This document shows, one piece after another, positions 1 through 63,217 of a stretch of DNA of 64,000 nucleotides. This DNA is from Macrostomum lignano (Eukaryota): assembly GCA_002269645.1 (NCBI GenBank), contig NIVC01001160.1:127372-191371 (forward strand). Direction: 5' to 3'. The notes beneath the pieces were generated by a model. That model was not told where the DNA came from. It saw only the letters and a list, made by a program, of their open reading frames with translations, and did not search any database. Position 1 is the first letter of the stretch. Every line of letters starts with the position of its first letter. Both the position numbers and the translations under genes were made by a program.

Positions 1-63
1 GGATGTTCGCGGCCCAACGATGCGGTTATTTTTAGGCTGGGGACGCCTGGCTGTCTGGTTCTG

Positions 64-270
64 CTAGTTCTGCTGGTCACTCTTGGTGCTGAGCAGGTAC
101 CTGATAAACATCTGGGAGCAGTCTTTTCCCCAGCGGAGACTGTTGGCGGCGCGATGCTGGCGGTAGTCATGGTCGAATCGGACCACCCGGTGCACTGGGA
201 ATCGGTCGAAAAGCTCAGCCACTTGGATTTTGTACCGGGCGTAGTCCTTGGCTTGTTCCACCGCGGCTCC
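64..270 (-). CDS. Possible terminal coding exon of an unidentified gene (QAKDYARYKIQVAELFDRFPVHRVVRFDHDYRQH...)
   Basis: GC-rich open frame ending in a stop at 64. No family recognised and splice boundaries not resolved. Confidence 0.25.
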   Translation of the reverse strand, partial: GAAVEQAKDYARYKIQVAELFDRFPVHRVVRFDHDYRQHRAANSLRWGKDCSQMFIRYLLSTKSDQQN

Positions 271-1749
271 GCCCCCACACCCCCGCAAGGGGGCTTCGCC
301 CCCTTGACCCCTCTCTGTGCACTCACTCAAATTTATGATGCAACTTAATAGTCAATCGACAATGGGATTCCAACACGCCGACTCGTGCGTCAATGGCAGA
401 ATCGTGCGTCAATTTTGCCATTGACACACTCATCGGCGTGCAGGAATCATTCATTCTTGAGTTGTTTGGCTGTTAGATTGTCAGCGCGGAGCATATTGGC
501 AGTGAGATATCGATATCTTTGGTAGCCAAAAAAATTTTTTGCCAAGCATGCCAACGCTGAGGGCAGAGCACGCGAATAAAAGGACCAGCGCGACCCCAAC
601 CCCCACCACCCCACACCACGCACACCGCACCCACCCCCACCCAGCGGGCAGAGGCACCGGCCCGGTCAGCTAAAACCGATTACAGAGCCAGTAAAACCGG
701 CCCTGAAATCGCAACATAATATTTGACTGGATTATTATCAATTGCGAATTGATTAAAATAAACTCGATCCTAGCGGGCGCTACATCGATATCGTCCATTA
801 CTAATCGATCTAAATTCGTCACACCAAGTTGCTGTTCTGACGTGTAAGCAAAAAACCTGACCTTCTCTTTATTGTAACTCATTTCAGTATTTCACTCATT
901 TTACCTATAGAAAAGTATGGCAGACAACTCAAAAACAGAAAGACAACTACTAACTTTAGACACCAGTAAAATTCTTTTAAACCACGGCTCTGGTTTTTTA
1001 CCATTAATTATATAGGCTTCACGTTCTACCTGATAGATTCTTTTAAGTATTCGACTGAGAGCCCAAACTTTACATAGCTGCTTGGCCCATATACATGAGT
1101 GTGTGTGTAATTTTTCATTCATTTATATACCGCAGTTTAGAAGTTACCTTGGGGGGGGACTAATTACTTTTGGAACACCAGAGTATTTTGAATTTTTACG
1201 TGACACAGTATTCTGAATGAAGGTGAGACAGAAGACTAATTAATTGAATAAGGTTCGCAGCCACTGGCGGTGGCTACTTACAAAGATGGCACTTCATCAA
1301 AAAAGGGTTGTTTCACGGCCACGGGAGCAAGAAGGTGTGCAGTTCGTATAAGTGCTCATCAAGATAGACTTTCGACCGTATAAATAATGTGAAACAAAAA
1401 CCCGGCAGAGTAAGAGCTAAAAGCAATCCCTTGACTCGTACATTAATTTGAATATTTGCAGACATGGAACACTATTAAATAACAACAAAGAAACATTCGA
1501 AACAAAACGAGTTCATCACGCAATTTATGTGGCGACAATTTCAGCTCCCCTTTTCGAGGCTATCCGCTGAGCTTATAAGAAAATTTTCCTCACAAGAAGC
1601 TCCCATATGCGCATTATTGAATAAACCTAAACTAAACTATATCATGTCATTTTATAAATAATGAGGTATCGGGGCTCCCAAATAGGCATATTACATGCAT
1701 ACAGCCAGCAAGCTATCTAAAGAAAAAGTTAAGTCTGTTGAGTTCATAA

Positions 1750-2167
1750 ATCCATGCAGTCTCAGCTCCACGGGGTGACTCAATCCATGCAGTCTCAGCT
1801 CCACTGGGTGACTCAATCCATGCAGTCTCAGCTCCACTGGGTGACTCAATCCATGCAGTCTCAGCTCCACGGGTTGACTCAATCCATGCAGTCTCAGCTC
1901 CACGGAGTGACTCAATCCATGCAGTCTCAGCTCCACTGGGTGACTCAATCCATGCAGTCTCAGCTCCACGGGGTGACTCAATCCATGCAGTCTCAGCTCC
2001 ACGGGTGACTCAATCCATGCAGTCTCAGCTCCACGGGTGACTCAATCCATGCAGTCTCAGCTCCACGGGGTGACTCAATCCATGCAGTCTCAGCTCCACG
2101 GGTTGACTCAATCCATGCAGTCTCAGCTCCACGGGGTGACTCAATCCATGCAGTCTCAGCTCCACGG
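1750..2167. repeat. 33-bp minisatellite (TCCATGCAGTCTCAGCTCCACGGGGTGACTCAA), about 12-13 copies
   Basis: Direct tandem periodicity; explains ORFs 1691-2002, 1754-2008 and 2037-2225. Confidence 0.95.
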
Positions 2168-2185
2168 ATTAACTCCCCCCCGTCA

Positions 2186-3420
2186 TCACTGGCGAATCAA
2201 GCATTCGAAGTTCTTCATCGAGTAGAACAGCGTCAGCTCCAGGCCAGCGTCGTGCAGATAATAGTACATTCCTCCGCCTGAAAATGCGGCTGGTGGCACC
2301 AGGTACACTCCGTTGGGGTTGATGAAATTGCACCAGCCGAACCACCAACCAGCTGACCTGTCATGGGCGCAGCTGCCCTCAGGCCAGTTGTCATTGTCAG
2401 CATCCGGCGTGCTGAACTGCCAGTTGTTCGGTGACCAGTCCCAATCAGTTCGCTGTCCGACACTCGACCTGCTCGCGTCCAACGGTCCCATCGAGCACCT
2501 GTACTTGTCAGTCGCTGGGCCAACAGAGAACGGAGCATTCTCAGCCCAGTACCAGGTGCCGTTCCAGTCGCTGAACTCCCAGCGGACTCTCCACCCTCCA
2601 GTGGCGGTGAGCTGGTGCAGCTGCTCCAGCCCCATCCAGTAGTTGAGACTCTCGCCCTGACCGAATCCATTGACGTATTCCGACCAGCCACGGTTGAAGC
2701 TGACGGAGCCGTCGACTCTGCGCTGGAACGTCGTCCAGCAGGTCTCCGACGGCTCTTTGATCTGCAGTTTGAGAGACAGGACGATTCATCAGTCAGCGAC
2801 CCAAGTCTCAGCTCACTCACCCACAGCATCATCAGCAGACTCAGCTCACTCACGCACAGCACCGGCAGACTCAGCTCACTCACCCACAGCAACAGCAGAC
2901 TCAGCTTACTCACCCACAGCACCGGCAGACTCAGCTCACTCACCCACAGCATCATTAGCAGACTCAGCTCACTCACCCACAGCATCGGCAGACTCAGCTC
3001 ACTCACTCACAGCACCGGCAGACTCAGCTCACTCACCCACAGCATCATCAGCAGACTCAGCTCACTCACCCACAGCAACGGCAGACTCAGCTCACTCACC
3101 CACAGCATCGGCAGACTCAGGTCGCTCTCATGCCGGCACTTCCTGCAGCCGTCCTGGCCACCTCGGTCGCACACCAGCAGGTCGCAGCCGCCCGATGCAG
3201 CGTCGAAGGAGGCCGCGTGAGCCCCGGCCGCCGCAGCGCTGCTGACGCAGTGCGTCTCGCCTTGAGCTCGGATCGATTTGAGCAGCCGGTACTCGGAGAC
3301 GTCACCTCGGAGCTGCTTCCAGGTCGTGACGGCCTGGGCTGAGACGGCCGGCAGGGCGAGCAGGGCGCCACAGCCGAAGGCAGTCCAAAACAGCAACGCA
3401 ACTGACTGCAGAATTCTCAT
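2186..3420 (-). CDS. Secreted fibrinogen-related domain (FReD) protein with N-terminal PAN/apple-like segment; 2 exons (3420-3100, 2761-2186), about 298 aa
   Basis: Exon 1 opens with signal peptide MRILQSVALLFWTAFGCGALLALPAVSAQA and ends TGG|GTGAGT (phase 0). Acceptor ...CTCTCAAACTGCAG| at 2762. Exon 2 reads IKEPSETCWTTFQRRVDGSVSFNRGWSEYVNGFG...YWMGLEQLHQLT...FSTPDADND...CA...GWWF..C...NPNG, the canonical fibrinogen C-terminal motifs. Confidence 0.9.
2806..3120 (-). repeat. 30/33-bp minisatellite in the FReD intron; the unit copies the exon 1 end plus the donor site
   Basis: Minus-strand unit CTGAGTCTGCCGATGCTGTGG|GTGAGTGAG, about 10 copies. Confidence 0.92.
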
Positions 3421-3901
3421 TCTGACTGGCGGTGAAAGCATCGAATCGGTGATGGGGATTCTGCAGACAGGGGGTGCTAAAAGTCTCATTTGATGGGTTT
3501 TTGTCTTTTTATAAACTGCCTTCGCTTTGTCAGCGATGCCTCCGAGCTGCATGAAGAAGTTGGCCAGCATCTCTTGTGCCTCATCGTCATTGTCATCATC
3601 TTCATGGGGTATTGTCGTTTACAAGAAATGGATCACTTCCGGTTCTATCGTAGTCATATTGTTGTATTGACTTTTACGTAGCTTTCTACTAGGGGAAGTT
3701 TCCGTGTGTCAATCGTGACCTAAGTTGGCCAGCAAGTCTCAGTTGTTGGGGTTAACCTGAGCTTTTCTTGTGTGAATTTTGCTCAGAAACAAATGGAGTC
3801 TGTTTTTCAGTCGGATATAGCATTATGCATATTTGCCTTGTGTGCAAACAGTGCAGTGTGGAGCTACAGGTCAATGGGAGATTTCCTTAGTTTGCATGCA
3901 G

Positions 3902-3904
3902 ACT

Positions 3905-3937
<33 letters not shown>

Positions 3938-3950
3938 GACTAACTAACTG

Positions 3951-4009
<59 letters not shown>

Positions 4010-4040
4010 GACTAACTAACTAACTAACTAACTAACTAAC

Positions 4041-4083
<43 letters not shown>

Positions 4084-4157
4084 AACTAACTAACAACTAA
4101 CTAACTAACTAACAACTAACTAACAACTAACTAAAAACTAACTAACAACTAACTAAC

Positions 4158-4189
<32 letters not shown>

Positions 4190-4219
4190 TACTAACTGAC
4201 TAACTAATTAACTAACTAA
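3902..4219. repeat. (CTAA)n / (TTAG)n microsatellite
   Basis: About 320 bp of near-perfect tetramer repeat. Confidence 0.97.
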
Positions 4220-4414
4220 GCAAGTAACTGAATAACCAAACATTTAATAATTTAAAGACTCGATATATCTAAGCAATATAAACTGGAGGCGCCGTTCGCT
4301 CTTCAAAGAAATGCACCATTACCCACGCAGACAATTTTGATCCGAGTTTATCGAACAGCGTACTGAGAGAAAAAAAACAATAAAAAGTGTCACGTGACTC
4401 TCGCAGCAGCGGAG

Positions 4415-5080
4415 TCAATCGGTGCAGAGGCCGAATCGACCAACAACGGGGTCGAAACCGATGCAGTAGAGACCCTCGCAGCAGTCTGCGCGGCGCCTGC
4501 ACACGTTGCCAAGGCCGTTGCACTGCCGGCTGCAGCCCGCCGCCTCCCTCGGAGCTGCGCGAAGGGGAGCGGCGATTGTGTGAGCTCTTAAAGATAATGG
4601 TAGTCAGAATTTACGTCTGGGAAAGATCACATCTGTCTGCTGGGGATCACATCTGTCTGCTGGGGATCACATCTGTCTGCTGGGGATCACATCTGTCTGC
4701 TGGGGATCACATCTGTCTGCTGGGGATCACATCTGTATGATATAGGTCAAATTTGTCTGGGTGGAGGTCAAATTTGTCTGGTGATGGTCACATCTGTCTT
4801 GTGAGAGTCACATCTGTCTGGGTGGAGGTCACATCTGTCTGGGTGGAGGTCACATCTGTCTGGTGGAGGTCACATCTTTTCGGTATAGGTTACATCTGTT
4901 TGGTGAGGATCACATCTGTCTTTAGGATGTCACATCTCTCAGATCACATCTGTTTGGATAAGGTCACATCTGTCGGAGGTGAAACAGGTGCCATTTGGTC
5001 AGAAACTACAAATTCACTTTTTACTCACCCATGAGCAAAGAGGCAAAAAGTACCAACAAGAGAAAGCCAATCTGCCACAT
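4415..5080 (-). CDS. Secreted inhibitor-cystine-knot (conotoxin/knottin-like) prepropeptide, 73 aa; exons 5080-5029 and 4584-4415
   Basis: Manual translation: MWQIGFLLLVLFASLLMA HTIAAPLRAAPREAAGCSR QCNGLGNVCRRRADCCEGLYCIGFDPVVGRFGLCTD*. Exon 1 ends ATG G|GTGAGT (phase 1) and joins ...TTTAAGAG|CT. Cys spacing C-x6-C-x5-CC-x4-C-x12-C. Confidence 0.85.
4618..4975. repeat. About 20-bp tandem repeat (GGGATCACATCTGTCTGCTG, degenerating to GGAGGTCACATCTGTCTGGGT) in the knottin-1 intron
   Basis: Direct periodicity. Confidence 0.9.
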
Positions 5081-5307
5081 CGCGCTTTGTCGGTCAGCTC
5101 AGCGTCAGCTTTTCAAATATCGCTCAACGTTTTAAATAATGCTCCTACTTGTCCTTAACAAATTCCCATGCGACTTTGATTCAGTTTGCTGCTGTGGCCA
5201 TAGACAGTGTTGACTTGTTTAGATTTCTATAGTTGCTCCTCAGGCCTGGCAACTTGCGTGTCTTCAGGCTTAGGTAATTTTTGCAGCTTTTGAGTATCTT
5301 CTTTTAA

Positions 5308-6271
5308 ATGTCAACCAACACACCAGGTCGCTATCTGAGACTTGTAATCTTTCTTGCTCTGCACACAGGTCAGTCAGTTATACTTTGTTTAATAATACCA
5401 CTTTCATGAACTTTGTATTATTACGGGGGTGGGGGGCGCAGCCCAGAGGTCCAGTGCGGTGCTCTGATGTGCCAGCGGCCCAGGCTCGATTCCAAGTGTA
5501 GTCGCCTTAATTTGGGCCTGAATTGGAATCTCTGCTCGGCTCTGCTCGTGCAATTAACGCCCTTTGAGGGCCGACCCTCAAGGAAGTGGGAAGTGTACAT
5601 GCCGAAACGATAAATTAAGTCAGGGCCGCTGTGCACTCCTGTGTGAGTGTGTGCCTGTGCGTGTGACTGCGTACGTGCACACAGCCCCTGCCTCTATCAA
5701 TACATACATGCACGCCTGTTCCAACTGTGTAAAATACAAAAACAACTGTACGCAGGCTGCAGCCACCCTGGCGCAACGCCTTCGGAGGCATCGACCCACA
5801 GCCAGCGCTGGGGCAATTCTGCTCATTCAGCTGACTCCTGAGCACACTCAAGAGCGCCAATAACTGTACTCAGGCACGCACTCGTGCACACGCTCACACA
5901 GGGTGCACATCAAATCGTTAGAAAGTCAAAATCCTGGTAGGAATCGAACCAGGAGTCGTGGCGCGAGACTCAGAGTTGCTCTTCCCAGCCCGTGTTCAAC
6001 TCAGTATGCCCAGCAATCCACTACCTTCCCAGCAGCTCCCGGAATCCTGGGCAGCCGACCCTGTGGAAAGGGCGGCGACCCCTGCACCACCGGCCCGGAC
6101 TGCTGCTCGGGCGCCTGCGACGCCAACCCCGCGTTTCCTTTCGGCTACTGCATTCACGGCTCGACCGCGGCAGCCAAATCCGGCAGAAGTTCCGGTTTGC
6201 AAGTCAGCCAGCGTGTCACCATGCTAACACTGGCCTGCCTGTTGCTGGTGCGAGTGGGCCGAAATTTGTAA
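5308..6271 (+). CDS. Inhibitor-cystine-knot (conotoxin-like) peptide with C-terminal hydrophobic tail (possible GPI signal); exons 5308-5368 and 6033(or 6036)-6271
   Basis: Exon 1 MSTNTPGRYLRLVIFLALHT+G|GTCAGT (phase 1). NAGNAG acceptor ...CCTTCCCAG|CAG|. Exon 2 APGILGSRPCGKGGDPCTTGPDCCSGACDANPAFPFGYCIHGSTAAAKSGRSSGLQVSQRVTMLTLACLLLVRVGRNL*. Spacing C-x6-C-x5-CC-x3-C-x10-C. The exon 1 assignment is inferred. Confidence 0.78.
5450..5677 (+). repeat. Dispersed repeat of about 230 bp, copy A (second copy at 23051-23286)
   Basis: Shares GATTCCAAGTGYAGTCRCCTTAATTTGGG, AAGTGTACATG and the identical CACTCCTGTGTGAGTGTGTGCCTGTGCGTGTGACTGCGTACGT with copy B. Confidence 0.8.
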
Positions 6272-6574
6272 TTTGCAGTTCATACAAATATTATTCGTAA
6301 TATCATTAGCTGTCTGTCAGCATTCCTTCCGCTGGGAAGACAGCAAAAATGAAATACATTATTTTTAAATAAACTACGAGTACATAGTCATAGGCTTTGA
6401 CCTCGTAAAGGCACCATTGTTGATTTCTTGAAGAACATGACGATTAGGGCAAAAAAGCATCCCCAATGTGCTTTGGCTCAAAAAGCAACAGAGCAACCCC
6501 ATGAGCCACAGATTTGCATCAATTCCTGTATGAACTTTTGACATCTTAGCAATCCTCCCCGAGCCAGTTATGTT

Positions 6575-7792
6575 TGACGTGACCCTTCTTTTATTTGAAA
6601 TGACGCTTCTTTTGTTTGACATCGGGCTTCTTTTGTTTGACATGACGTGTGTTTTAAGTTTTACATGACGTGTCTATTTTTACATGACGTGTCTATTTAT
6701 TACATGACGCTTCTTATATATGTTTTACATGACGTGTCCTTTATGTTTGACATGACGCGTCTTTTATGTTTTACATGACGTATCTTTTATGTTTGACATG
6801 ACGCGTGTTTTATGTTTAACATGTCGTGTCTTTTATGTTTAACATGTCGTGTCTTTTATTTTTGACATGACGCGTCTTTTATGTTTAACATGTCGTGTCT
6901 TTTATTTTTGACATGACGTATCTTTTATGTTTGACATGACGCGTCTTTTATGTTTTACATGACGTGTCTTTTATGTTTGACATGACGCGTCTTTTATGTT
7001 TGACATGACGCGTCCTTTATGTTTTACATGACTCGTCTTTTATGTTTGACATGACGCGTCTTTTATGTTTGACATGACGTGTCTTTATGTTTGACATGAC
7101 GTATCTTTTATGTTTGACATGACGCCTCCTTTATGTTTTACATGACTCGTCTTTTATGTTTGACATGACGCGTCTTTTATGTTTGACATGACGCGTCTTT
7201 TATGTTTAACATGTCGTGTCTTTTATTTTTGACATGACGTATCTTTTATGTTTGACATGACGCGTCTTTTATGTTTTACATGACGCGTCTTTTTTTGTTT
7301 AACATGTCGTGTCTTTTATTTTTGACATGACGTATCTTTTATGTTTGACATGACGCGTCTTTTATGTTTTACATGACGCGTCTTTAATGTTTGACATGAC
7401 GCGTCCTTTATGTTTTACATGACTCGTCTTTTATGTTTGACATGACGTGTCTTTATATTTGACATGACGCGTCTTTTATGTTTGACATGACGCGTCTTTT
7501 ATGTTTAACATTTCGTGTCTTTTATTTTTGACATGACGTATCTTTTATGTTTGACATGACGCGTGTTTTATGTTTTACATGACGCGTCTTTTATGTTTAA
7601 CATGTCATGTCTTTTATTTTTGACATGACGTATCTTTTATGTTTGACATGATGCGTCTTTTATGTTTTACATAACGTGTCTTTTATGTTTGACATGACGC
7701 GTCTTTTATGTTTGACATGACGCGTCTTTTATGTTTGACATGACGCGTCTTTAATGTTTGACATGACGCGTCTTTTATGTTTGACATGACGC
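6575..7792. repeat. About 23-bp AT-rich minisatellite (TTTTATGTTTGACATGACGCGTC)
   Basis: About 1.2 kb of direct periodicity. Confidence 0.95.
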
Positions 7793-8244
7793 CAAACTCC
7801 AAATATAAAATATATGCACCAATGAAATGAAAATTCAGAACTTCAATGTGAGTTCACGCATCAAATCAAGGCGTTGATTGAAACTCCTGATTTATGATAA
7901 ATGAGGGAGATTTCTGGCAGCAAGATCTCTTCAATTGCTACAAAAGTCGCCACAACTGACAAGCAAGTTGAATGAAGGGTCGCCCAATGAGCACAGGCAG
8001 TGCAAGGATCACTGAGCCTGGAATCTGGACTGTCTACCTGTACATAGGATTGTTTAGCGGATTGGGAAGAAATCAAATTTAAACAGTGTAATTTGAATCG
8101 GGATATTTTGGTTGGCAAACCAAATTTAAATCCATTATACGAAATAAAAATTTTGAACTAAAGTCGTTCTCTCCATATAGTGATACCCGACTGTATGCTC
8201 AGATGTGATGCAAGTAGCTATTTAGAAACAAAATGCACTAGTTA

Positions 8245-8405
8245 GTTACTGCAACTACAACTGCAACTGCAACTGTAACTGTAACTGTAACTGCAACTGC
8301 AACTGTAACTGCTACTGTTAATGCAACTCTAACTGCAACTGCAACTGCAACTGTAACTGCTACTGTTAATGCAACTCTAACTGCAACTGCAACTGCAACT
8401 GCACT
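8245..8405. repeat. (ACTGYA)n hexamer satellite, left block
   Basis: Same unit as 10444-13039. Confidence 0.9.
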
Positions 8406-10443
8406 TGACTTACTTGACTTAGCTGCACGGGGCTCCGTGCGTCCGGAAACAGCGAGGAGGCGTTGCTGCCCATTTCGCTAGCCCCTGGCGACCACGGGCA
8501 GCTAGTGCTGCGGTGTCGCGCAGGGAGTTCCGGTGGCGCCGATGTCCGCAGCGTGGTCCCCCTCCGGAGGGTCCAGGAGGTGGACTGCCGCTCGCCCAGT
8601 AGCCCTTAGGTAGCGGACGAGCTGGCAGAGATTCTCGGGCCTGAAAACGTCGGAGAGGTCCGGGTTTGGGCCGAGGTGGGTGAGCCTGTCCTGAGTAAAG
8701 GCGGGGCATTCACAGATAAAGTGCTCCGCATTCTCGACACCGGAGAGGCAGAATGGGCATTCCTCACTGCGGATTTTTCCCTGGAGGTAGCGATGCCTGG
8801 CAAAACAGCCATGACCCGAGAGGGCCATGGTCACCGCCCTGATGTCCCTGCGGTTGAGTCCAAGCAGGGCCCTGTGGAGGGCGGGGGAGAACAGGGGACA
8901 GCCGCGCGGGATTCCCGGCAGTCTGGGGCGTAAGGCCACATTTCCTTGTGCTTTGAGCCACCCACTGGTTGATCCGAGTGGTGACAACGGCGGTGGGGGT
9001 GGGGGCCACGGGCAGAGGACCAGTAAAAGAACCGGTTGGGCCATCCTTGGCCAGGCGATCGGCCAACTCATTGCCGGGGTGGTCCGAGTGCCCTGGGATC
9101 CACCTTAGGGACACCTTGTTGGAGGCGCCTAAGCGGTTGAGCTGCCCGATGCAGTCAAGGACTGTACGCGAGCAGGTGGTGGTGCGCTCAAGGGCGTGAA
9201 TAGCAGATTCACTGTCCGAGTGGAGGGTAATTTCCTTCCCCAGACGCGCTGATTGTACAGCTCCATGGCACAGGAGCAGATGGCGAGAACTTCGTTCTGG
9301 AAGACGGTGGAGCAGGTGCCGGTGTGCTGGGAGAAGGTCGCCACAGTTCTCCCTCCAGACACGATGCAGTAGCCGTAGCCAGGGGCGGAGTTGATTTGGG
9401 TCTTGTCAGTGAAGCAGTGGATTTCACGGGATTTCCAGTTGTCCCTTGCTTCATGACGTGGTGGAATGCTGTTTTGAATTTGAGCGGAGAGCAGAGCGTG
9501 GACGGGATTCCGTCCGAGAGGGTCAGCAGGCCTCCCGCTGCTTCCAGGTCTCGCATGCTGAGGTCGCCGTGCGGCCATAGGTTCCGCTTTCTAAAGGCGA
9601 ACTGCTTCTGGATTTGGACACCCGCGTCAAGTAGACGGCGGGTGGTCTTCATTGCCTCCTTTCTGACAAAGAGGTCGAGGGGGGAATGTCCATGAAGGAG
9701 TTCATCCCAGCGAAGGGCGTAGAGGGAGCCGCGCTCATGATAGCTCGACAAGCGCGGCCTTGCACCCTATTTAGAGCCTCAAGAACCCCTTTCACCTCTA
9801 GAGCACTGTTCCAAATGAAGCCGGCGAAGATGGCCGGTCTAACAATGGCAGTGTAAATCCACCAGAGGCGGCGGGGGGTGAGGCCCCAGGTGGCGCCGAA
9901 AGCTCTGCGGATCTGCGCGAGAGTCGCGAGGGCTTTGCGGGCTTTGGATTGGACGTGCGGAGTCCAACTCAACCTGTGGTCGAGGGTGACACCCAGACAT
10001 CTGGTTTGTTTCTCCATGGCAACGGGTTTGCCATAGAGGGAGAGCGGTTCGATCCTCCAGTTTCGGCGACTGGTGAACATAATAGCCACGGTTTTAGACT
10101 CAGAGAACCTGAGACCGCAGCTATGTGCCCAGCGCTCGGCACGGTGGATGAAGGCTTGAAGGAGGTCCCTGAGGACCGCGGGTGATGGTCCAGCCACAGT
10201 GGCGGTAACATCGTCCGCATAGCCGACCATCTGAACCGGGTCCGGATGCGGGCTGCAGAGCAGCTCGTCCATGGCTAAATTCCAGAGGATCGGGCTGAGG
10301 ACTCCACCTTGCGGTTCGCCTTTCTGGACCTCCACAGAGCGGGAGTGTCCCAGGAGGTGCGAGGTGGCAGTACGATGGGAGACCATGTACATGATCCAGT
10401 GGATAAGGTGCTCGTGCGTGCCCCGGGATTCCAGGGATTCCAC
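8406..10443 (-). mobile_element. 5'-truncated, frameshifted non-LTR retrotransposon with RT + RNase H + C-terminal CCHC (LOA/R1/I-group-like)
   Basis: RT motifs PQGGVLSPILWN, VGYADD, RCLGVTLD. RNase H motifs [31 protein letters not shown]. Zn finger CPFC...ENAEHFICEC. These are split over several frames. Confidence 0.88.
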
Positions 10444-13039
10444 TTTAACTGGAACTGTAACTTCAAGTGAAACTGCAACTGCAACTGCAACTGTAACTGT
10501 AACTGCAACTTCAAGTGCAACTTCAACTGCAACTGCAACTGTAACTGCAACTGTAAATGCAACTGTAACTGCAACTGTAACTGTAACTGCAACTGCAACT
10601 TCAATTGCAACTTCAACTGCAACTTCAAGTGCAAGTGCAACTGCAACTGCAACTGCAACTGTAACTGTAACTGTAACTGTAACTGCAACTTCAAGTGCAA
10701 CTGCAACTGCAACTGTAACTGTAACTGTAACTGCAACTTCAAGTGCAAGTGCAACTGCAACTGCAACTGCAACTGTAACTGTAACTGTAACTGTAACTGC
10801 AACTTCAAGTGCAAGTGCAACTGCAACTGCAACTGCAACTGTAACTGTAACTGCAACTTCAAGTGCAAGTGCAACTGTAACTGCAACTGTAACTGTAACT
10901 GTAACTGCAACTTCAAGTGCAAGTGCAACTGCAACTGCAACTGCAACTGTAACTGCAACTGCAACTGTAACTGTAACTGTAACTTCAAGTGCAACTGCAA
11001 CTGCAACTGCAACTGTAACTGTAACTGCAACTTCAAGTGCAACTGCAACTGCAACTGCAACTGTAACTGTAACTGCAACTGCAACTGTAACTGCAACTTC
11101 AATTGCAACTTCAACTGCAACTGCAACTGTAACTGTAACTGCAACTGCAACTGCAACTGTAACTGTAACTGTAACTTCAAGTGCAACTGCAACTGCAACT
11201 GCAACTGTAACTGTAACTGCAACTGCAACTGCAACTGCAATTGCAACTGTAACTGTAACTGTAACTTCAACTGCAACTGTAACTGCAACTTCAATTGCAA
11301 CTTCAACTGCAACTGCAACTGTAACTGTAACTGCAACTGCAACTGCAACTGTAACTGTAACTGTAACTTCAAGTGCAACTGCAACTGCAACTGCAACTGT
11401 AACTGTAACTGCAACTGCAACTGCAACTGCAATTGCAACTGTAACTGTAACTGTAACTTCAAGTGCAACTGCTACTGCAACTGCAACTGTAACTGTAACT
11501 GCAACTTCAAGTGCAAGTGCAACTGCAACTGCAACTGCAACTGTAACTGTAACTGCAACTTCAAGTGCAAGTGCAACTGCAACTGCAACTGCAACTGTAA
11601 CTGTAACTGTAACTTCAAGTGCAACTGCAACTGCAACTGCAACTGTAACTGTAACTGCAACTTCAAGTGCAACTGCAACTGCAACTGCAACTGTAACTGT
11701 AACTGCAACTTCAAGTGCAAGTGCAACTGCAACTGCAACTGCAACTGTAACTGCAACTGTAACTGTAACTGCAACTGCAACTGCAACTGTAACTGTAACT
11801 GTAACTTCAAGTGCAACTGCAACTGCAACTGCAACTGTAACTGTAACTGCAACTTCAAGTGCAAGTGCAACTGCAACTGCAACTGCAACTGTAACTGTAA
11901 CTGTAACTTCAAGTGCAACTGCAACTGCAACTGCAACTGTAACTGTAACTGCAACTTCAAGTGCAACTGCAACTGCAACTGCAACTGTAACTGTAACTGC
12001 AACTTCAAGTGCAAGTGCAAGTGCAACTGCAACTGCAACTGTAACTGTAACTGCAACTTCAAGTGCAAGTGCAACTGCAACTGCAACTGCAACTGTAACT
12101 GCAACTGTAACTGTAACTGCAACTTCAACTGCAACTGCAACTGTAACTGTAACTTCAAGTGCAACTGCAACTGCAACTGCAACTGTAACTGTAACTGCAA
12201 CTTCAAGTGCAACTGCAACTGCAACTGTAACTGTAACTGCAACTTCAAGTGCAACTGCAACTGCAACTGTAACTGTAACTGTAACTGCAACTGCAACTGT
12301 AACTGCAACTGTAACTGCAACTGTAACTGTAACTGCAACTTCAATTGCAACTTCAACTGCAACTGCAACTGCAACTGTAACTGCAACTGTAAATGCAACT
12401 GCAACTGCAACTGTAACTGTAACTGCAACTGTAACTGTAACTGCAACTGCAACTGTAACTGCAACTGTAACTGTAACTGCAACTTCAATTGCAACTTCAA
12501 CTGCAACTGCAACTGTAACTGTAACTGCAACTGTAACTGTAACTGCAACTGCAACTGTAACTGCAACTGTAACTGTAACTGCAACTTCAATTGCAACTTC
12601 AACTGCAACTGTAACTGTAACTGTAACTGTAACTGCAACTGCAACTGCAACTGTAACTGCAACTGTAACTGCAACTGCAACTGCAACTGCAACTGCAATT
12701 GCAATTGCAACTTCAATTGCAACTTCAACTGCAACTTCAACTGTAACTGTAACTGCAATTGCAATTGCAACTTCAACTGCAACTTCAACTGCAACTGTAA
12801 CTGTAACTGTAACTGTAACTGCAACTGCAACTGCAACTGTAACTGCAACTGTAACTGCAACTGCAACTGCAACTGCAACTGCAATTGCAATTGCAACTTC
12901 AATTGCAACTTCAACTGCAACTGTAACTGCAACTGCAACTGCAACTGCAACTGCAATTGCAATTGCAACTTCAATTGCAACTTCAACTGCAACTGCAACT
13001 GCAACTGTAACTTTAACTGCAACTTCAAGTGCAACTGCA
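10444..13039. repeat. 2.6-kb (ACTGCA/ACTGTA/ACTTCAAGTGCA)n hexamer satellite
   Basis: Direct periodicity; produces the spurious TATATV, VAVAV and LQLQ ORFs. Confidence 0.97.
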
Positions 13040-13073
13040 ATCGCTTCATTCTGCGATCGCATAGAGGCCTGAT

Positions 13074-13282
13074 CAGGGACAACTAAAACACTCGGGACGC
13101 GAAACAAGCCAAATCATGGTGAAAAAAGTTGGGGGCTCGTTTGAAAGCAGTGTCCTATGGCCATCCAACTAGCATGAACTTTCAATGCATGAAAAACTGG
13201 GCGCCCATAGACTTAAACGAGTCCTTAACTTTTTTCACCATGATTTGGCTTGTTCCCGTCCCGAGTTTTTTAGTTGTCCCTG
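13074..13282. mobile_element. hAT-type MITE, 209 bp
   Basis: About 60-bp TIRs beginning CAGGGACAACTAAAA; perfect 8-bp TSD GGCCTGAT at 13066-13073 and 13283-13290. Confidence 0.9.
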
Positions 13283-13627
13283 GGCCTGATTAGAATATGT
13301 GCAAAAAATTACCAAAGAACTGCGCACCTTTCCACACAAGTTTCCACTCCGTATTCTATAGCTGCAGAAGTCCATGGACTGGAGGCGGGAGAGAGCGGCA
13401 CGCACGCAGAGAGAGAGAGAGAGACGGAGCCACAGAACCGCAGGCGCTTATTTCTTGCCGTACACATGCCAGCGCAGTGGGGGGAGGCCGCGGTCAAACG
13501 CCGCTCTCATATAGCCACTAGCATTTAAAGGCAGGCATTTTTAAGCGCCATTAAAGCAAAAAAGCAACAGACCCATTGCAGACTCGAACGAACGTATTAA
13601 AAGCATGCATTCGAATGTTGTGCAGCC

Positions 13628-16600
13628 ATGAGCCAGCATCTGCGCCAAGCCGAAGAGTCCGACATCGAGGCGCACGTCGCCGCTTTCAATGCCAGATGTC
13701 GGTCGGACTCCGAGCGAGTCCAGCTGATCAAAACTGCAAACGGCTTGGCCTGCAGCGGCCAGCTGAGGCTGCACTGGGACGTGTGGGGCTGCCTGGCTCT
13801 GCTGGAGAGCGACGGCTCAAAGCCGCTGAATGGGCACTACGCGTATCTGGGCGATCTGGGCGATCGAGCGTTGGACGGCGCAGCGACAGAGGAGGACAAA
13901 CCCGACCAGGAGCTGCAGGAGGATCAGGTTGCTGAGGATGGCGAGGAGGTCAGCGGATTGTCACTCTTTTATGGTGTATTCTGCCACTCTCTCAGTCTAA
14001 TCTGCCACTCTCTCAGTCCAATCTGCCACTCTCCCAGTCTAATCTGCTACTCTCCCAGTCAAATCTGCCACTCTCCCAGTCTAATCTGCCACTCTCCCAG
14101 TCAAATCTGCCACTCTCTCAGTCCAATCTGCCACTCTCCCAGTCAAATCTGCCACTCTCCCAGTCTAATCTGCCACTCTCCCAGTCTAATCTGCCACTCT
14201 CCCAGTCAAATCTGCCACTCTCTCAGTCTAATCTGCCACTCTCCCAGTCAAATCTGCCACTCTCCCAGTCTAATCTGCCACTCTCCCAGTCTAATCTGCC
14301 ATTCTCCCAGTCTAATCTGCCACTCTCCCAGTCTAATCTGCCACTCTCCCAGTCTAATCTGCCACTCTCCCAGTCTAATCTGCCATTCTCCCAGTCTAAT
14401 CTGCCACTCTCCCAGTCTAATCTGCCACTCTCCCAGTCTAATCTGCCACTCTCCCAGTCTAATCTGCCACTCTCCCAGTCTAATCTGCCATTCTCCCAGT
14501 CTAATCTGCCACTCTCCCAGTCTAATCTGCCACTCTCCCAGTCTAATCTGCCACTCTCACAGTCTAATCTGCCACTCTCCCAGTCTAATCTGCCACTCTC
14601 ACAGTCTAATCTGCCACTCTCCCAGTCTAATCTGCCACTCTCTCAGTCTAATCTGCCACTCTCCCAGTCTAATCTGCTACTCTCCCAGTCAAATCTGCCA
14701 CTCTCTCAGTCTAATCTGCCACTCTCCCAGTCAAATCTGCCACTCTCTCAGTCTAATCTGCTACTCTCTCAGTCTAATCTGCCACTCTCCCAGTCTAATT
14801 TGCCACTCTCTCAGTCTAATCTGCCATTCTCTCAGTTTAATCTGCCATTCTCTCGGTCTAATCTGCCATTCTCTCAGTCTAAGTTGCTCTATCCTCTAAG
14901 TCTACAGTAGTCTACTCTATCCTACATAGTCTACTTTAAGACTACTAGAAGCCACTACACTCTTCACTCTTCACTTTTTTTATCTTACTAGATTCAGCAA
15001 GGCCCATTGTGCCTTACATATTACATTTTAAACTAATCTTTATAATACATGTAGTTCCTAGGCCTCACCCAGCCCAAACTTTCCTTTAGAAATAATAAGT
15101 ATAGCAATCTACATGTGTTTAGCTTTGTAGCTTAGCCTTCTAAACTGAACTTTATATTTGCATCTGAAGTTCTAATTTCAGAATTAAGTGCTGGTATTAT
15201 AAGCAGAGCAGCAGAAACCTCTGGAGCTTGCGTCATGGTCTTTGACAGTGTTGGTCAGTTGTTTTGAAACTAATCAGTGGTCCCTAGAAGGAGTCCAGGA
15301 GCTTGTGACCAAGGCAAAGTTAAAGCAAGGTGTCTCTGGTTCGGTTCGGGTTGAGTGAATTGCGTATTTCCCTGATTCCCTGATTCCCCGATGTCCCTGA
15401 CACCCAGTTTGACGCCTCCTTATACCCAGTTTGACGCCTCCTGACACCCAGTTTGACGCCTCCTTATACCCAGTTTGACGCCTCCTGACACCCAGTTTGA
15501 CGCCTCCTGACACCCAGTTTGACGCCTCCTTATACCCAGTTTGACGCCTCTGACACCCAGTTTGACGCCTCCTTACACCCAGTTTGACGCCTCCTGACAC
15601 CCAGTTTGACGCCTCCTGACACCCAGTTTGACGCCTCCTTATACCCAGTTTGACGCCTCCTTATATCCAGTTTGACGCCTCCTGACACCCAGTTTGACGC
15701 CTCCTGACGCCCAGTTTGACGCCTCCTTATACCCAGTTTGACGCCTCCTTATATCCAGTTTGACGCCTCCTGACACCCAGTTTGACGCCTCCTGACACCC
15801 AGTTTGACGCCCCCTGTGAGACCATATTGAAAGATGGCTGCTGACGCCCGTGTCCACCCGCTCCGCACCGCAGGCTTTCGCTGGCGTCAGACTTCGTCGC
15901 CGACGCAGGCGTCAGAAAATTCCGGCCAATTGGCGCCGCTCGGTGAACGGGCACGCATTCAGGGGGCCGAGCTCGGTGCTGCCGGACGCTGGCCAGAGTG
16001 TGCAGGTGCTGGCGGATATTGGCGACCGGGTGCATCAGGTGAGGCTTCACCGTCATCTTAATTTTCTATCCTAACGATCTCGTAGAACGTTTCGTATGGC
16101 CCTTGAAAATCGGCAACGAACGATTCAAACAACGCGATAAATTATCTAGCAGCTTATCCGGGGTTATGGAGTGATTTGCGCATTCATATATGACCTAAGC
16201 TCGCGCGACATTAAGCTTTAAGGTCATTCAAAATAGTCGGCACAAGAAATAAATGAAGTGGAATATGTTACACCTTTAAGTCACACGCAGACAGATAGCA
16301 TATAAGTCGAATTTAAATAAATGAAATGAATGAAAATAAACAACTGATGAACTCCCAGCAGGTGATTTCAATTAGTAGTGAGCAGGTGTCAGAACCACAC
16401 TATGACGCTCTCAACTCCTTGAAGTGCTGTCCCGTTCAAAATGTCACCATGATAAGAACCGAGCTAAATAGTAATTGCAAGCAACTCATTAGTGACCCTA
16501 GCGACTCTTGTGACTTTTTAACGACTCAAACGACTGAAATGCAACGGAGAGGCGGCTCTAGAGTCTCGAGTGCAACAACGGGAGTTGTAAAATCGTATAA

Positions 16601-22165: not shown

Positions 22166-22679
22166 CTCCCATCTCTGTTTATTTATCCTAATGTTGAAAC
22201 GTGAACATCAAAATTGTAGTGGGCAATATGGGATGCTAAAACTTAATACGAAGCAGTTTTCCATCTTTCTAACCAGTTCGTACAGGATAGCTGTGTTTTT
22301 ATCTGCTAGCATTACATAATCAAACGTATTTTTATCTCGAATGGAATGCACACCGAGCGCTAGTATAATTTACCTTTTGCTTCCACTAATGCCATAAAGT
22401 CTCAGAATGCACCAACAACTGGGGGAACTGGGGGAACGCGTTCCAATGTCGATCTGCAGTCACGCAGTATCCAGGGCCCCGGCTGGGGACATTCCCACGG
22501 ATATTTTTCCTTGCACTGCAGGAATGATTGAGGATCTGACCAATGCAACCAAACAAGCGCAAAAGAGGGGATATTTAAACAGGGAACTGTCTCCCCTCCT
22601 ACTGGAGCCTTTGGTGCCAATTCATTCTGGTTCTGCGCAGTTGCAGTGCAGCTCGACCCCCCGCCAGAGAAAAACTGCA

Positions 22680-26253: not shown

Positions 26254-26946
26254 ATGTCAACTGAGTCTGCGGTGGCCCTCAAGCTGCCCACGTTCTGGGC
26301 CAGCCAGCCTCGCGCCTGGTTCATCCAGGCAGAGGCGCAATTCGTCTTCCGCAACATCACGCAAGACGCTACCAAGTACTTTCACCTCGTAGCCGCGCTG
26401 GACCAGCAGTCAGCCGATCGCCTGCTGGACGTGCTTGAGACACCGCCGGCTGAGAACAAGTACGATTCTCTCAAGGCCCGCCTCCTCGGCACATTCGGCC
26501 TGACGCAGCAACAGCGTGCCAGCCGGCTGCTCAACCTGGCCGGCCTCGGTGACCGCCGCCCGTCCAAGCTCATGGACGAGATGCTGGCCCTGCTCGGCAA
26601 CCACCGGCCCTGCATGCTCTTCGAGGAGCTTTTTCGCCAGCAGATGCCGGCAGACATTCGCATGGCACTCGTCTCCGCGGATTTCGCTGACCCGCGCGCA
26701 GTTGCGCGACTCGCGGATGAACTCTGGGCGAGCCCGGCACAGCCCGTGGCCACCGCCACCCTGCCGCCAGAGCACCCGCCGGTAGTTGCTGCCACCGCCC
26801 GCCCAGCTCGCGCCAAGCCGCAGCAGCACCAGCCGAGGGAGGCCGACGGCCCCATCTGTTTCTTCCACCGGAAGTTCGGCGCCAAGGCCCGGCGTTGCGA
26901 GCCGCCCTGCCAGTTCTCGGGAAACGGACCGGCCGGCCGTCAGTGA
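26254..26946 (+). CDS. gag: Gag of the CsRn1-like element
   Basis: [23 protein letters not shown]-terminus; CHCC finger [18 protein letters not shown]. Confidence 0.93.
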
Positions 26947-29900: not shown

Positions 29901-30107
29901 GCTCTGCGGCCACGAGGCCGCCCCCGCCTGGACGGCCGGCCACAACTGCCACGTGGTGGAGACCCTCCGGTCGCAGCTGCGCACCCGCAAGCGCCACCGG
30001 GGCTCCCACCAACGCGCCTCCCACCGGTGCAAGCGACCCGGCCTCCAGCGTCTGGTCGCCGCCAGCTTCCGCCTCGCCGGTGCCGCCCGACGCGGTTTCG
30101 GTCCTAG
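26919..30107 (+). CDS. pol: Pol (PR-RT-RNase H-integrase) expressed by -1 frameshift
   Basis: Slippery heptamer G GGA AAC at 26919-26925. Motifs FLVDTGA, YIDD, DAS..., H-LAHP...[18 protein letters not shown]. Frame is uninterrupted. Confidence 0.95.
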
Positions 30108-62726: not shown

Positions 62727-63217
62727 ATTATCATAGATAATTATGGTTCAGCTGCACAACTCTCAGGCAGCTCATGAGCAGCAAAATGAGAAGGCTGCTA
62801 CAATGGCAAACCGTGCAGATCTCACCGGAAGCCAGCAGTTTTCGCTACAAGAAATGCAGCATAGGCGTCCAGTGAAATCTGCACAGAAACCCTGACAGCG
62901 CTCCCAAGAGTGGGAGAATTCATTACTCGAACTTCCGGTGATTTCAGCCAATGTGCCCTGTCTCAATAATCCATTTTTCTGCTAGTCCATTCTCTCTCTC
63001 TTTCAGAGCGCTGTTAGTACTCGTATATCTTGCCTGTCTCAGTTGGTTTACATAGCCTTGTTTTCACACCAAGTCACGAGGCGCAAGTGGCACAGGTTGG
63101 CTGCAACACTTTATAGTTATTGACCCAGCTAGCATTGTTGCCATGCAATTTAAGAGTGTGAGACAGTTGTTGAACTGTTAATATTTATGAAATACGGAGC
63201 TCTTTATGGGCCAATCT

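What the first reader, a model, noticed from the sequence alone, without database searches (positions are those of the whole stretch)
5308..6271. Knottin 2 resembles baculovirus conotoxin-like proteins but carries a hydrophobic, GPI-like tail
Seen: core CGKGGDPCTTGPDCCSGACDANPAFPFGYCIH, then small residues (GSTAAA), a polar spacer and TMLTLACLLLV. From memory, the CCSGAC...F[G/N][F/Y]C signature resembles baculovirus CTL proteins; this was not database-checked. Inference: a cell-surface-anchored knottin. The terminal RVGRNL makes the GPI call imperfect, so a single TM anchor or a cleaved tail is also possible. A NAGNAG acceptor (6031-6035) allows a +/- Ala isoform.
Basis: partly seen in the sequence, partly recalled or inferred. 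Interest (0 to 1): 0.72.

Follow-up and report, generated by a model that had tools for sequence, protein, structure and literature searches.

The report
Flatworm knottin with GPI-like tail
This is a small, already annotated but uncharacterised gene of the flatworm Macrostomum lignano that encodes a cystine-knot mini-protein followed by an unusual C-terminal tail that fits most, but not all, rules for a lipid (GPI) membrane anchor; the likeness to baculovirus conotoxin-like proteins is only the generic likeness shared by all such knots.

Summary
Window 5308-6271 (+) is a two-exon gene of Macrostomum lignano (contig NIVC01001160.1; GenBank 'hypothetical protein' BOX15_Mlig024669g1/g2, 99 aa). 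It encodes an N-terminal hydrophobic leader, an inhibitor-cystine-knot domain (C-x6-C-x5-CC-x3-C-x10-C) and a 38-residue tail. The CAGCAG acceptor is real. GenBank models of identical DNA use both acceptors (98 and 99 aa).

The knot matches solved knottins from spiders, cone snails, plants and a beetle (profile E 2.6e-5). Baculovirus Ctl proteins appear only as non-significant structural matches, and Pfam Conotoxin scores below its cut-off. The CTL likeness is therefore generic, not membership.

The hydrophobic stretch is only 12 residues and is followed by RVGRNL. It is too short for a normal transmembrane helix.

The tail has no homologue anywhere. The head-to-head paralogue (Knottin 1, 4415-5080, minus strand) ends two residues after its last Cys. 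The three genomic copies are too alike to test selection.

Best reading: a secretory knottin carrying a lineage-specific GPI-type signal (about 0.4). The main rival is a soluble knottin with a cleaved or inert extension. Function is unknown and interest is moderate.

The parts
5308..5368 (+). Knottin 2 exon 1 (coding part). It encodes MSTNTPGRYLRLVIFLALHT plus the first base of the next codon. This is the hydrophobic leader and probable signal peptide. The donor is CAG|GTCAGT.
   Evidence: The best 9-residue Kyte-Doolittle window is 2.67 at residues 10-18. The AlphaFold model has a helix at 6-21. The product matches the GenBank model exactly.
5369..6032 (+). Phase-1 intron of Knottin 2 (664 nt, or 667 nt with the downstream acceptor). 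It holds tRNA-like stretches and an inverted repeat.
   Evidence: ARAGORN and Rfam find no RNA gene. The g3 copy differs from the window at only two intron positions.
6030..6035 (+). Tandem CAGCAG (NAGNAG) acceptor. Use of the first or the second AG gives the 99-aa or the 98-aa product, which differ by one Ala.
   Evidence: The g1/g2 models are 99 aa and the g3 model is 98 aa, although the exon and acceptor DNA is identical. The annotation is RNA-seq guided (PMC5730564).
6033..6271 (+). Knottin 2 exon 2 (coding part, stop included).
6062..6151 (+). Inhibitor-cystine-knot domain, residues C31-C60, with spacing C-x6-C-x5-CC-x3-C-x10-C.
   Evidence: Pfam Toxin_18 E 3.5e-4. Profile against the PDB E 2.6e-5. 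Knot-only model pLDDT 86. The fold matches are knottins.
6152..6196 (+). Ser/Ala/Gly-rich stalk IHGSTAAAKSGRSSG (residues 61-75). It holds the best candidate GPI attachment triplet, S73-S74-G75. It also holds K69-S-G-R72, a possible convertase and amidation site.
   Evidence: GPI rules are taken from PMC9098846. Model pLDDT is below 50 for residues 67-80.
6197..6214 (+). Polar spacer LQVSQR (residues 76-81).
6215..6250 (+). Hydrophobic stretch VTMLTLACLLLV (residues 82-93, 12 residues, flanked by R81 and R94).
   Evidence: The model has a helix at 78-98. The clustering of hydrophobic residues is reached in 0.25% of residue shuffles of the tail.
6251..6271 (+). Terminal RVGRNL plus the stop codon. 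This is the feature that does not fit a canonical GPI signal.
6368..6373 (+). AATAAA, the probable poly(A) signal, 97 nt after the stop codon. G+C falls from 0.59 in the tail to 0.32 in this flank.
5081..5307 (.). Spacer of 227 bp between the two divergent start codons. It is the presumed shared promoter region of the Knottin 1 / Knottin 2 pair.
   Evidence: The same arrangement is seen in all three genomic copies.
4415..5080 (-). Knottin 1, the paralogue (BOX15_Mlig018955g1, 63 aa). Exon 1 is 5080-5029, the phase-1 intron is 5028-4555 and holds a 20-mer tandem array, and exon 2 is 4554-4415. The protein ends two residues after the last Cys and has no tail.
   Evidence: The joined exons equal P0011 exactly. 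BLASTP against Knottin 2 gives 40% identity over 40 residues, E 1e-5.

Best explanation
Knottin 2 is an expressed two-exon gene of Macrostomum lignano. It is one of a divergent pair of paralogous knottin genes.

Proposed pathway:
1. The leader in exon 1 takes the protein into the ER (inferred).
2. Residues 31-60 fold into an inhibitor cystine knot. This is shown at the level of sequence profile and predicted fold.
3. The last 26 residues act as a GPI-attachment signal. The transamidase cuts after a small residue, S73 of S73-S74-G75, which lies 8 residues before a marginally hydrophobic 12-residue segment. It then transfers the peptide to a GPI lipid (inferred).
4. The product would be a knot of about 46 residues held on the outer face of the producing cell by a stalk of about 13 residues. 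There it could bind a target on the same or a touching membrane. This resembles what GPI-linked Ly6/lynx-type 'prototoxins' do with a different fold (analogy only).

The tail is a lineage-specific addition. The paralogue and all other relatives found lack it. The target and the physiological role are unknown.
For: Gene and product:
- The joined exons equal the GenBank proteins.
- That annotation is built from RNA-seq-guided transcript assemblies (PMC5730564). Transcripts that read through the tail therefore exist.

Knot:
- The cysteine pattern occurs far more often than in shuffles.
- Pfam Toxin_18 gives E 3.5e-4.
- A profile of the knot and its relatives hits solved knottins at E 2.6e-5.
- The knot-only model has pLDDT 86.
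- The best PDB fold matches are all knottins, with TM 0.52-0.63 normalised to the target and rmsd 1.5-3.0 A.

GPI layout, judged against the rules stated in PMC9098846:
- S73 is a small residue.
- G75 is a small residue at +2.
- The spacer S74-R81 is 8 residues.
- A hydrophobic segment follows.

The arrangement is non-random: only 0.14% of residue shuffles of the tail give a hydrophobic run near the C-terminus with a small-residue triplet in register.

The tail has coding-like composition. G+C is 0.59 and GC3 is 0.67, against 0.32 just after the stop. All three genomic copies agree on the frame.

The best 19-residue Kyte-Doolittle window in the tail is 1.45, below the classical 1.6 transmembrane threshold. 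This favours a marginal, GPI-type segment over a membrane span.
Against: - The hydrophobic segment is 12 residues, not 15-20, and it is followed by RVGRNL with two Arg. No dedicated GPI or signal-peptide predictor could be run.
- The leader's hydrophobic core is short (LVIFLAL, 7 residues).
- The tail has no homologue in 1.84 billion representatives or in the word-indexed search.
- The paralogue lacks a tail.
- The three genomic copies differ at only 2 intron positions within the 964-bp gene, so there is no evidence of selection on the tail.
- A UniParc entry (P0002, 82 aa) carries the same protein with a shifted frame after the knot and no hydrophobic tail. This is either an error of an older assembly or a real variant.
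- No natural GPI-linked knottin turned up in the literature search.
Confidence: 0.4

Rival explanations
1. Knottin 2 is a soluble secreted knottin. The C-terminal extension is either a propeptide or a young, functionally inert read-through. A propeptide could be removed at K69-S-G-R72, which after trimming could leave an amidated ...AAAKS end. The hydrophobic stretch would then have no anchoring role.
For: - Almost all known knottins are soluble.
- The paralogue Knottin 1 ends two residues after its last Cys.
- The tail has no homologue anywhere.
- The hydrophobic run is short and is followed by charged residues.
- K-x-x-R followed by a preceding Gly fits the general convertase and amidation pattern. 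This rests on established knowledge of peptide processing and was not tested here.
- A database variant (P0002) lacks the tail.
Against: - The segregation of hydrophobic residues into one block near the C-terminus, with a small-residue triplet in register, is rare in shuffles at 0.14-0.25%.
- The tail keeps coding-like G+C and the frame is identical in all three copies.
- KSGR is not a classical dibasic site.
Confidence: 0.35
2. Knottin 2 is a type I single-pass membrane protein. The segment V82-V93 spans the bilayer and RVGRNL is a very short cytoplasmic tail, with R94 and R97 following the positive-inside rule.
For: - Arg residues flank the hydrophobic block on both sides.
- AlphaFold models residues 78-98 as one helix.
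- The positive residues after the block resemble a stop-transfer signal (inference).
Against: - Only 12 uncharged residues lie between R81 and R94, about 18 A as a helix.
- The best 19-residue Kyte-Doolittle window is 1.45, below 1.6.
- Model pLDDT for this part is only about 64-67.
Confidence: 0.12
3. The mature mRNA usually omits the tail. Either the donor-like site CAA|GTCAGC at 6203 splices to an unannotated downstream exon, or the annotated reading frame of the tail is an assembly artefact, as the frame-shifted database entry P0002 might suggest.
For: - GTCAG at 6203 has the same core as the exon-1 donor GTCAGT.
- P0002 reads a different frame after the knot.
Against: - All three copies in the Illumina-polished Mlig_3_7 assembly have identical exon sequence.
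- All three RNA-guided models end at the same stop.
- An AATAAA lies 97 nt downstream of it.
- P0002 needs two separate frame changes within about 15 nt.
Confidence: 0.08

Closest known systems
Inhibitor-cystine-knot (ICK) peptides of framework C-C-CC-C-C. Examples are the spider venom peptides U3-SYTX-Sth1a/h (PDB 5fzv, 5fzw), kappa-conotoxin PVIIA, omega-atracotoxin, plant bidentatide and the beetle antifungal ALO3 (1q3j).
   Same: - Six Cys with the same framework and similar loop lengths.
- A Gly two residues before the last Cys.
- An N-terminal leader.
- The profile built on the knot matches these peptides at E 2.6e-5 to 0.03.
- The predicted fold superposes on solved knottins at rmsd 1.5-3.0 A.
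   Different: - Those peptides end at or just after the last Cys, or carry a short amidation signal. Knottin 2 has 38 further residues that include a hydrophobic block.
- No Pfam toxin family is reached at its curated cut-off.
- The host is a diatom-feeding free-living flatworm and not a venomous animal. The diet is from general knowledge.
Baculovirus conotoxin-like proteins (Ctl-1/Ctl-2; Pfam Conotoxin PF02950).
   Same: - The same knot framework.
- Four Ctl proteins are among the 17 best matches in the viral structure library, with 37-44% identity over 27-35 columns and TM 0.50-0.62 normalised to the query.
   Different: - The matches are not significant (E 1.1-4.2).
- PF02950 scores 15-17 bits against a cut-off of 25.1.
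- A scan of viral contigs found no relative.
- Cellular knottins match better.
- To my knowledge Ctl proteins are short secreted proteins without a hydrophobic C-terminal tail.
Knottin 1 of the same locus (BOX15_Mlig018955g1, window 4415-5080, minus strand).
   Same: - A true paralogue, with 40% identity across the leader and the first half of the knot (E 1e-5).
- The same two-exon structure, with a phase-1 intron at the same place and the same ...CAG|CTCC acceptor context.
- The pair is divergent, with start codons 227 bp apart.
   Different: - It has seven Cys, one extra before the knot.
- The last loop is longer.
- It has no C-terminal extension.
GPI-anchored Ly6/uPAR 'prototoxins' such as lynx1, and engineered GPI-tethered conotoxins or spider toxins ('tethered toxins').
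   Same: If the GPI reading is right, the architecture is the same: signal peptide, small disulfide-rich toxin-like domain, short stalk, then GPI signal. Tethered-toxin constructs built on knottins are in use (for example PMC9191634, found).
   Different: - Ly6 proteins have the three-finger fold and are not knots.
- Tethered knottins are man-made.
- No natural GPI-linked knottin was found in the literature search.
- Anchoring of Knottin 2 is not shown.
Multi-repeat knottin precursors found by the exhaustive search. They are P0004 (ENA metagenome, 4 repeats), a 'putative phenoloxidase inhibitor' of the midge Corethrella (P0005), a Crucibulum laeve protein (P0007) and a Thermomicrobiales protein (P0008).
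   Same: - These are the nearest sequences outside M. lignano, at 37-49% identity over the knot and E 6e-8 to 1.5e-4.
- P0004 shares the motifs GG-x-PC, CCSG-x-C and PFGYC.
   Different: - They are tandem arrays of 4-5 knots and none has this tail.
- They are spread over insects, fungi and bacteria, so the likeness may be convergent.
- P0008 is anchored differently, by an LPGTG sortase-type motif plus a membrane segment.

Membership tests
Inhibitor cystine knot (knottin) | Six Cys in the framework C-C-CC-C-C with loop lengths in the usual range. | tested here: met
   The spacing is C-x6-C-x5-CC-x3-C-x10-C at 6062-6151. The pattern occurs 3 times in the window against 0.07 in shuffles.
Inhibitor cystine knot (knottin) | Sequence-profile similarity to established knottin families. 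| tested here: inconclusive
   Pfam Toxin_18 gives 21.0 bits (E 3.5e-4), below its 24.3 cut-off. Conotoxin, Toxin_21 and Conotoxin_I2 are weaker. A profile of the knot plus relatives hits solved knottins at E 2.6e-5.
Inhibitor cystine knot (knottin) | Knottin fold: a small triple-stranded sheet tied by three disulfides. | tested here: met
   The knot-only model has pLDDT 86 with short strands. The top 5 of 7 PDB matches, and 6 of 7 overall, are knottins, with TM 0.52-0.63 normalised to the target. Foldseek E-values are not significant for so small a domain.
Inhibitor cystine knot (knottin) | Disulfide connectivity I-IV, II-V, III-VI, with the third bond threading the ring. | not testable with these tools
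   Model coordinates are not returned. Mass spectrometry or NMR of the native peptide would be needed.
Baculovirus conotoxin-like proteins / Pfam Conotoxin PF02950 | Score at or above the curated family cut-off. | tested here: not met
   The scores are 17.0 and 15.4 bits against a cut-off of 25.1.
Baculovirus conotoxin-like proteins / Pfam Conotoxin PF02950 | Specific structural or sequence closeness to viral Ctl beyond that to other knottins. | tested here: not met
   Ctl proteins appear at ranks 4, 5, 10 and 13 with E 1.1-4.2. Spider, cone-snail and plant peptides score better in sequence searches. No relative was found in viral contigs.
GPI-anchored proteins (C-terminal signal as summarised in PMC9098846) | N-terminal signal peptide. 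| tested here: inconclusive
   There is a hydrophobic leader, with a 9-residue Kyte-Doolittle window of 2.67 and a model helix at 6-21. Its core is only 7 residues long and no signal-peptide predictor was available.
GPI-anchored proteins (C-terminal signal as summarised in PMC9098846) | Small residue at the attachment site and a small residue at +2. | tested here: met
   S73-S74-G75 fits, with G71-R72-S73 as an alternative.
GPI-anchored proteins (C-terminal signal as summarised in PMC9098846) | Hydrophilic spacer of about 8-12 residues. | tested here: met
S74-R81 is 8 residues, or 10 residues counted from G71.
GPI-anchored proteins (C-terminal signal as summarised in PMC9098846) | Hydrophobic tail of 15-20 residues that ends the protein. 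| tested here: not met
   The hydrophobic run is 12 residues (V82-V93) and is followed by RVGRNL with two Arg.
GPI-anchored proteins (C-terminal signal as summarised in PMC9098846) | Anchor actually attached. | not testable with these tools
   This needs analysis of the native protein.
Single-pass transmembrane proteins | Hydrophobic span of about 18-21 residues. | tested here: not met
   There are 12 residues between R81 and R94. The best 19-residue Kyte-Doolittle mean is 1.45, below 1.6.
WAP four-disulfide-core domain (the automatic UniProt name of this protein) | Eight Cys forming four disulfides, and a match to the WAP profile. | tested here: not met
   The domain has six Cys. No WAP family appears in the Pfam scan even at E up to 10. 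The name is seen.

The most novel reading that the evidence does not exclude
Knottin 2 would be a natural GPI-tethered inhibitor-cystine-knot peptide. In that case a flatworm has independently arrived at the 'tethered toxin' architecture, which is otherwise known in nature only for the three-finger Ly6/lynx fold and for knots only as a laboratory design. The peptide would act as a membrane-bound, cell-autonomous modulator of a channel or receptor. The untethered paralogue next door, driven from the same 227-bp divergent promoter region, would be the diffusible counterpart.
Probability: 0.25. Interest if true: 0.6.

Novelty: new variant of a known kind. Interest (0 to 1): 0.38.

Why it matters
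Knottins are among the most widespread toxin, defence and signalling scaffolds, but I found no description of them in flatworms. If the tail is a working GPI signal, this would be the first natural membrane-tethered knottin. It would be a knot-fold counterpart of the Ly6 'prototoxins', in an animal that has transgenesis and expression resources. If the tail is inert, the gene is one more orphan cysteine-rich secreted peptide. In that case the useful outcomes are corrections: the 'WAP domain' auto-name is wrong, and the CTL likeness is generic.

Tried and rejected
- **Word-indexed protein searches.** I searched with the whole protein, with a knot profile and with the tail alone. They returned only the gene's own copies, the frame-shifted entry P0002 and Knottin 1. 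The tail search found nothing.
- **Profile-based locus search.** The single-protein scan of viral contigs found no relative.
- **Fold search with the full-length model.** Against viral structures it gave only noise, because the leader and tail helices dominate. I repeated it with the knot alone.
- **Selection test on the tail.** The three genomic copies are identical in the exons and differ at only 2 intron positions within the 964-bp gene (3 substitutions and 2 indels over the aligned 1.2 kb), so they carry no information.
- **Expression data.** The gene identifiers Mlig024669 and Mlig018955 occur neither in the searchable full texts nor in the held supplements of five M. lignano papers.
- **tRNA or SINE in the intron.** This idea is not supported. 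ARAGORN and Rfam find no tRNA or RNA family in the window.
I rejected it in favour of SSG on spacing grounds.
- **WAP domain.** Rejected.
- **Third pattern hit.** The hit at 62835-62897 (minus strand) lies within 100-170 bp of simple-repeat arrays and has no leader exon. I treat it as chance.
Full report
**1. Where we are**

The window is the last 64 kb of contig NIVC01001160.1 (positions 127372-191371) of the Macrostomum lignano assembly GCA_002269645.1. Locus L002, fetched through the encoded protein, is 100% identical to window 1-16271. M. lignano is a free-living flatworm. Its DV1 genome is rich in tandem repeats and carries large recent duplications (PMC5730564). That fits the many tandem arrays in the window and the three near-identical copies of this locus.

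**2. The observation**

- Exon 1 runs from the ATG at 5308 to 5368 and ends in phase 1 before GTCAGT.
- Exon 2 starts after either AG of CAGCAG (6030-6035) and runs to the stop at 6269-6271.
- Joined as they stand, the exons give 99 or 98 residues without a stop.
- The products are exactly GenBank PAA45940.1/PAA71506.1 (BOX15_Mlig024669g1/g2, 99 aa) and PAA92186.1 (g3, 98 aa), all named 'hypothetical protein'.
- Across 1.2 kb the g3 copy differs from the window at two intron positions and a few flanking ones, and nowhere in the exons or at the acceptor.
- The 98-aa and 99-aa models therefore differ only in which AG the annotators' transcripts used. The annotation was derived from RNA-seq-guided transcript assemblies. 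This is indirect evidence that the gene is expressed, that transcripts read through the tail, and that both NAGNAG forms occur.
- The knot lies at 6062-6151 and the tail segments lie as listed under parts.
- A loose knottin pattern is found three times in the window, against 0.07 expected from shuffles.

**3. The neighbour**

On the minus strand, 227 bp from the start codon of Knottin 2, begins Knottin 1.

- Its exon 1 is 5080-5029 (MWQIGFLLLVLFASLLM plus one base, donor GTGAGT).
- Its intron contains a 20-mer tandem array.
- Its exon 2 is 4554-4415.
- The joined product equals GenBank BOX15_Mlig018955g1, 63 aa.
- The two proteins are 40% identical over the leader and the first half of the knot (E 1e-5).
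- They share the phase-1 intron position and the CAG|CTCC acceptor context, so they are paralogues in a divergent pair.
- Knottin 1 has an extra seventh Cys and ends two residues after the last Cys.
- The pair is present in all three genomic copies.

**4. What the knot is**

- Pfam gives only sub-threshold hits: Toxin_18 (conotoxin O-superfamily) at 21 bits against 24.3, Conotoxin PF02950 at 15-17 against 25.1, and Toxin_21.
- Against solved structures, the single sequence is closest to two Scytodes spider venom peptides (E 0.015-0.034) and to the beetle antifungal ALO3 (E 0.16).
- The exhaustive HMMER search of 1.84 billion representatives found the gene's own copies plus five multi-repeat knottin proteins (E 6e-8 to 1.5e-4). 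These come from a metagenome, a midge ('putative phenoloxidase inhibitor'), a bird's-nest fungus and a Thermomicrobiales bacterium.
- A profile of Knottin 2, Knottin 1 and those repeats (A2) hits solved knottins of spiders, cone snails, plants and insects, with a best E of 2.6e-5.
- AlphaFold on the knot alone gives pLDDT 86.
- The best PDB fold matches of the full model are all knottins except one Dickkopf cysteine-rich domain. They include a spinach trypsin inhibitor, Magi4, robustoxin, maurocalcin and psalmotoxin, with rmsd 1.5-3.0 A over 32-37 columns.
- I conclude that it is an inhibitor-cystine-knot peptide. The disulfide connectivity itself could not be checked.

**5. The baculovirus CTL lead**

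- With the knot-only model, the viral structure library returns four baculovirus Ctl proteins among 17 matches. They have 37-44% identity over 27-35 columns and TM 0.50-0.62 normalised to the query, but E-values of 1.1-4.2.
- Giant-virus and iridovirus proteins rank above them.
- A scan of viral contigs found no relative.
Knottin 2 is nevertheless no closer to Ctl than to any other C-C-CC-C-C knot. It is not a member of that family and there is no sign of a viral origin.
- The signature ending G-[F/Y]-C is a general feature. The Gly two residues before the last Cys is conserved in at least 70% of the aligned relatives.

**6. The tail**

After the last Cys come 39 residues. I compared them with the rules stated in PMC9098846: a small attachment residue, a small residue at +2, a hydrophilic spacer of 8-12 residues and a hydrophobic tail of 15-20 residues.

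- The best register is S73 (site), G75 (+2), spacer S74-R81 (8 residues), then V82-V93.
- Three rules are met. The fourth is not: the hydrophobic block has 12 residues and is followed by RVGRNL.
- A membrane span is unlikely, because only 12 uncharged residues lie between two Arg and the best 19-residue hydropathy mean is 1.45.
- The layout is not what the tail's own composition gives by chance, at 0.14-0.25% of shuffles.
- The tail has coding-like G+C (0.59, GC3 0.67), while the sequence after the stop drops to 0.32. The tail therefore does not look like freshly recruited 3' UTR.
- From memory and not checked here, GPI signals placed internally or followed by extra residues can still be processed. 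Marginal hydrophobicity is typical of such signals.

Against the GPI reading:

- No homologue of the tail exists in any database searched.
- The paralogue has no tail.
- The copies are too alike for a selection test.
- One UniParc entry (P0002) has the same protein with the frame changed twice just after the knot, ending without a hydrophobic block. I think this most likely reflects indel errors of an older assembly, because all three copies of the polished assembly agree. I cannot prove it.
- A donor-like CAA|GTCAGC at 6203 could in principle remove the tail. No annotated model uses it, and an AATAAA follows the stop by 97 nt.

**7. Verdict**

- Shown: an expressed, annotated but undescribed flatworm knottin gene, one of a divergent paralogous pair, with a NAGNAG acceptor and a unique C-terminal extension.
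- Inferred: entry into the secretory pathway.
- Inferred with about 0.4 confidence: processing of the extension as a GPI signal at S73.
- Main rival, at about 0.35: a soluble knottin whose extension is cleaved (possibly at KSGR, leaving an amidated end) or inert.
- Lesser rivals: a true membrane span (0.12) and loss of the tail by splicing or an assembly artefact (0.08).
- The function of the knot (channel or receptor ligand, protease or phenoloxidase inhibitor, antimicrobial) cannot be told from sequence. Its net charge is about -1, which does not favour a classical cationic antimicrobial peptide.
- UniProt's automatic name 'WAP domain-containing protein' is not supported.
- I found no paper describing flatworm knottins or a natural GPI-linked knottin. 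The architecture would be a new variant of a known kind if the anchor is real.

Noticed in passing
window 26895-30107 (+): One long ORF of 1070 aa carries reverse transcriptase, RNase H, integrase zinc-binding and integrase core domains. It is the pol region of a Ty3/Gypsy-type LTR retrotransposon and lies in the G+C-rich block at 26-30 kb (GC 0.66-0.68). I only noted it and did not examine its intactness or its ends.
   Followed up: partly
window 54901-56175 (+) and 35050-35862 (+): A second ORF with a partial reverse-transcriptase domain lies at 54901-56175. An ORF with a CCHC zinc knuckle (gag-like) lies at 35050-35862, near the assembly gap of N at 36711-37326.
   Followed up: no
window 3906-4219, 4627-4937, 6568-7792, 10447-13040, 19730-22177 and many more: The window is packed with tandem arrays. 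The knottin pair is boxed in by (AACT)x80 on the 3' side of Knottin 1, a 20-mer x15 inside the Knottin 1 intron, and a 23-mer x54 on the 3' side of Knottin 2. (AACTGC)x432 at 10447-13040 produces long spurious ORFs on both strands.
   Followed up: no
window 5369-6032 (Knottin 2 intron): There are stretches that look like tRNA arms (about 5425-5500, and in reverse about 5937-5995). There is also a 37-nt inverted repeat at 5638-5674 / 5866-5902. ARAGORN and Rfam find nothing. This may be a decayed tRNA-derived SINE or MITE.
   Followed up: partly
window 5274-5286: A polypyrimidine-AG motif (TAATTTTTGCAG) lies 21 nt upstream of the Knottin 2 start codon. It could be a spliced-leader trans-splice acceptor, since 38.8% of M. 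lignano genes are trans-spliced (PMC5730564). This was not tested.
   Followed up: no
window 13628 onward (+); L002 18321-20964: The next annotated gene downstream encodes a 295-aa product with a Ras-association (RA) domain. Its first ORF overlaps a 21-mer tandem array at 13980-14882.
   Followed up: no
protein P0008 (Thermomicrobiales MAG, HET9659116.1), not in the window: A bacterial protein has a twin-arginine-like leader, four tandem knottin-like repeats, an LPGTG sortase-type motif and a C-terminal membrane segment. It would be a wall-anchored array of knots in a bacterium.
   Followed up: no
protein P0004 (ENA metagenome contig of 3.7 kb), not in the window: This is the closest non-Macrostomum relative of the knot (41% identity, E 6e-8). 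It is a 399-aa precursor with four knots separated by acidic spacers, from an unidentified organism.
   Followed up: no
window 62835-62897 (-): This is the third match to the loose cysteine pattern. It lies 100-170 bp outside the simple-repeat arrays at 62064-62725 and 63231-64000 and has no leader exon. I take it as a chance match.
   Followed up: partly
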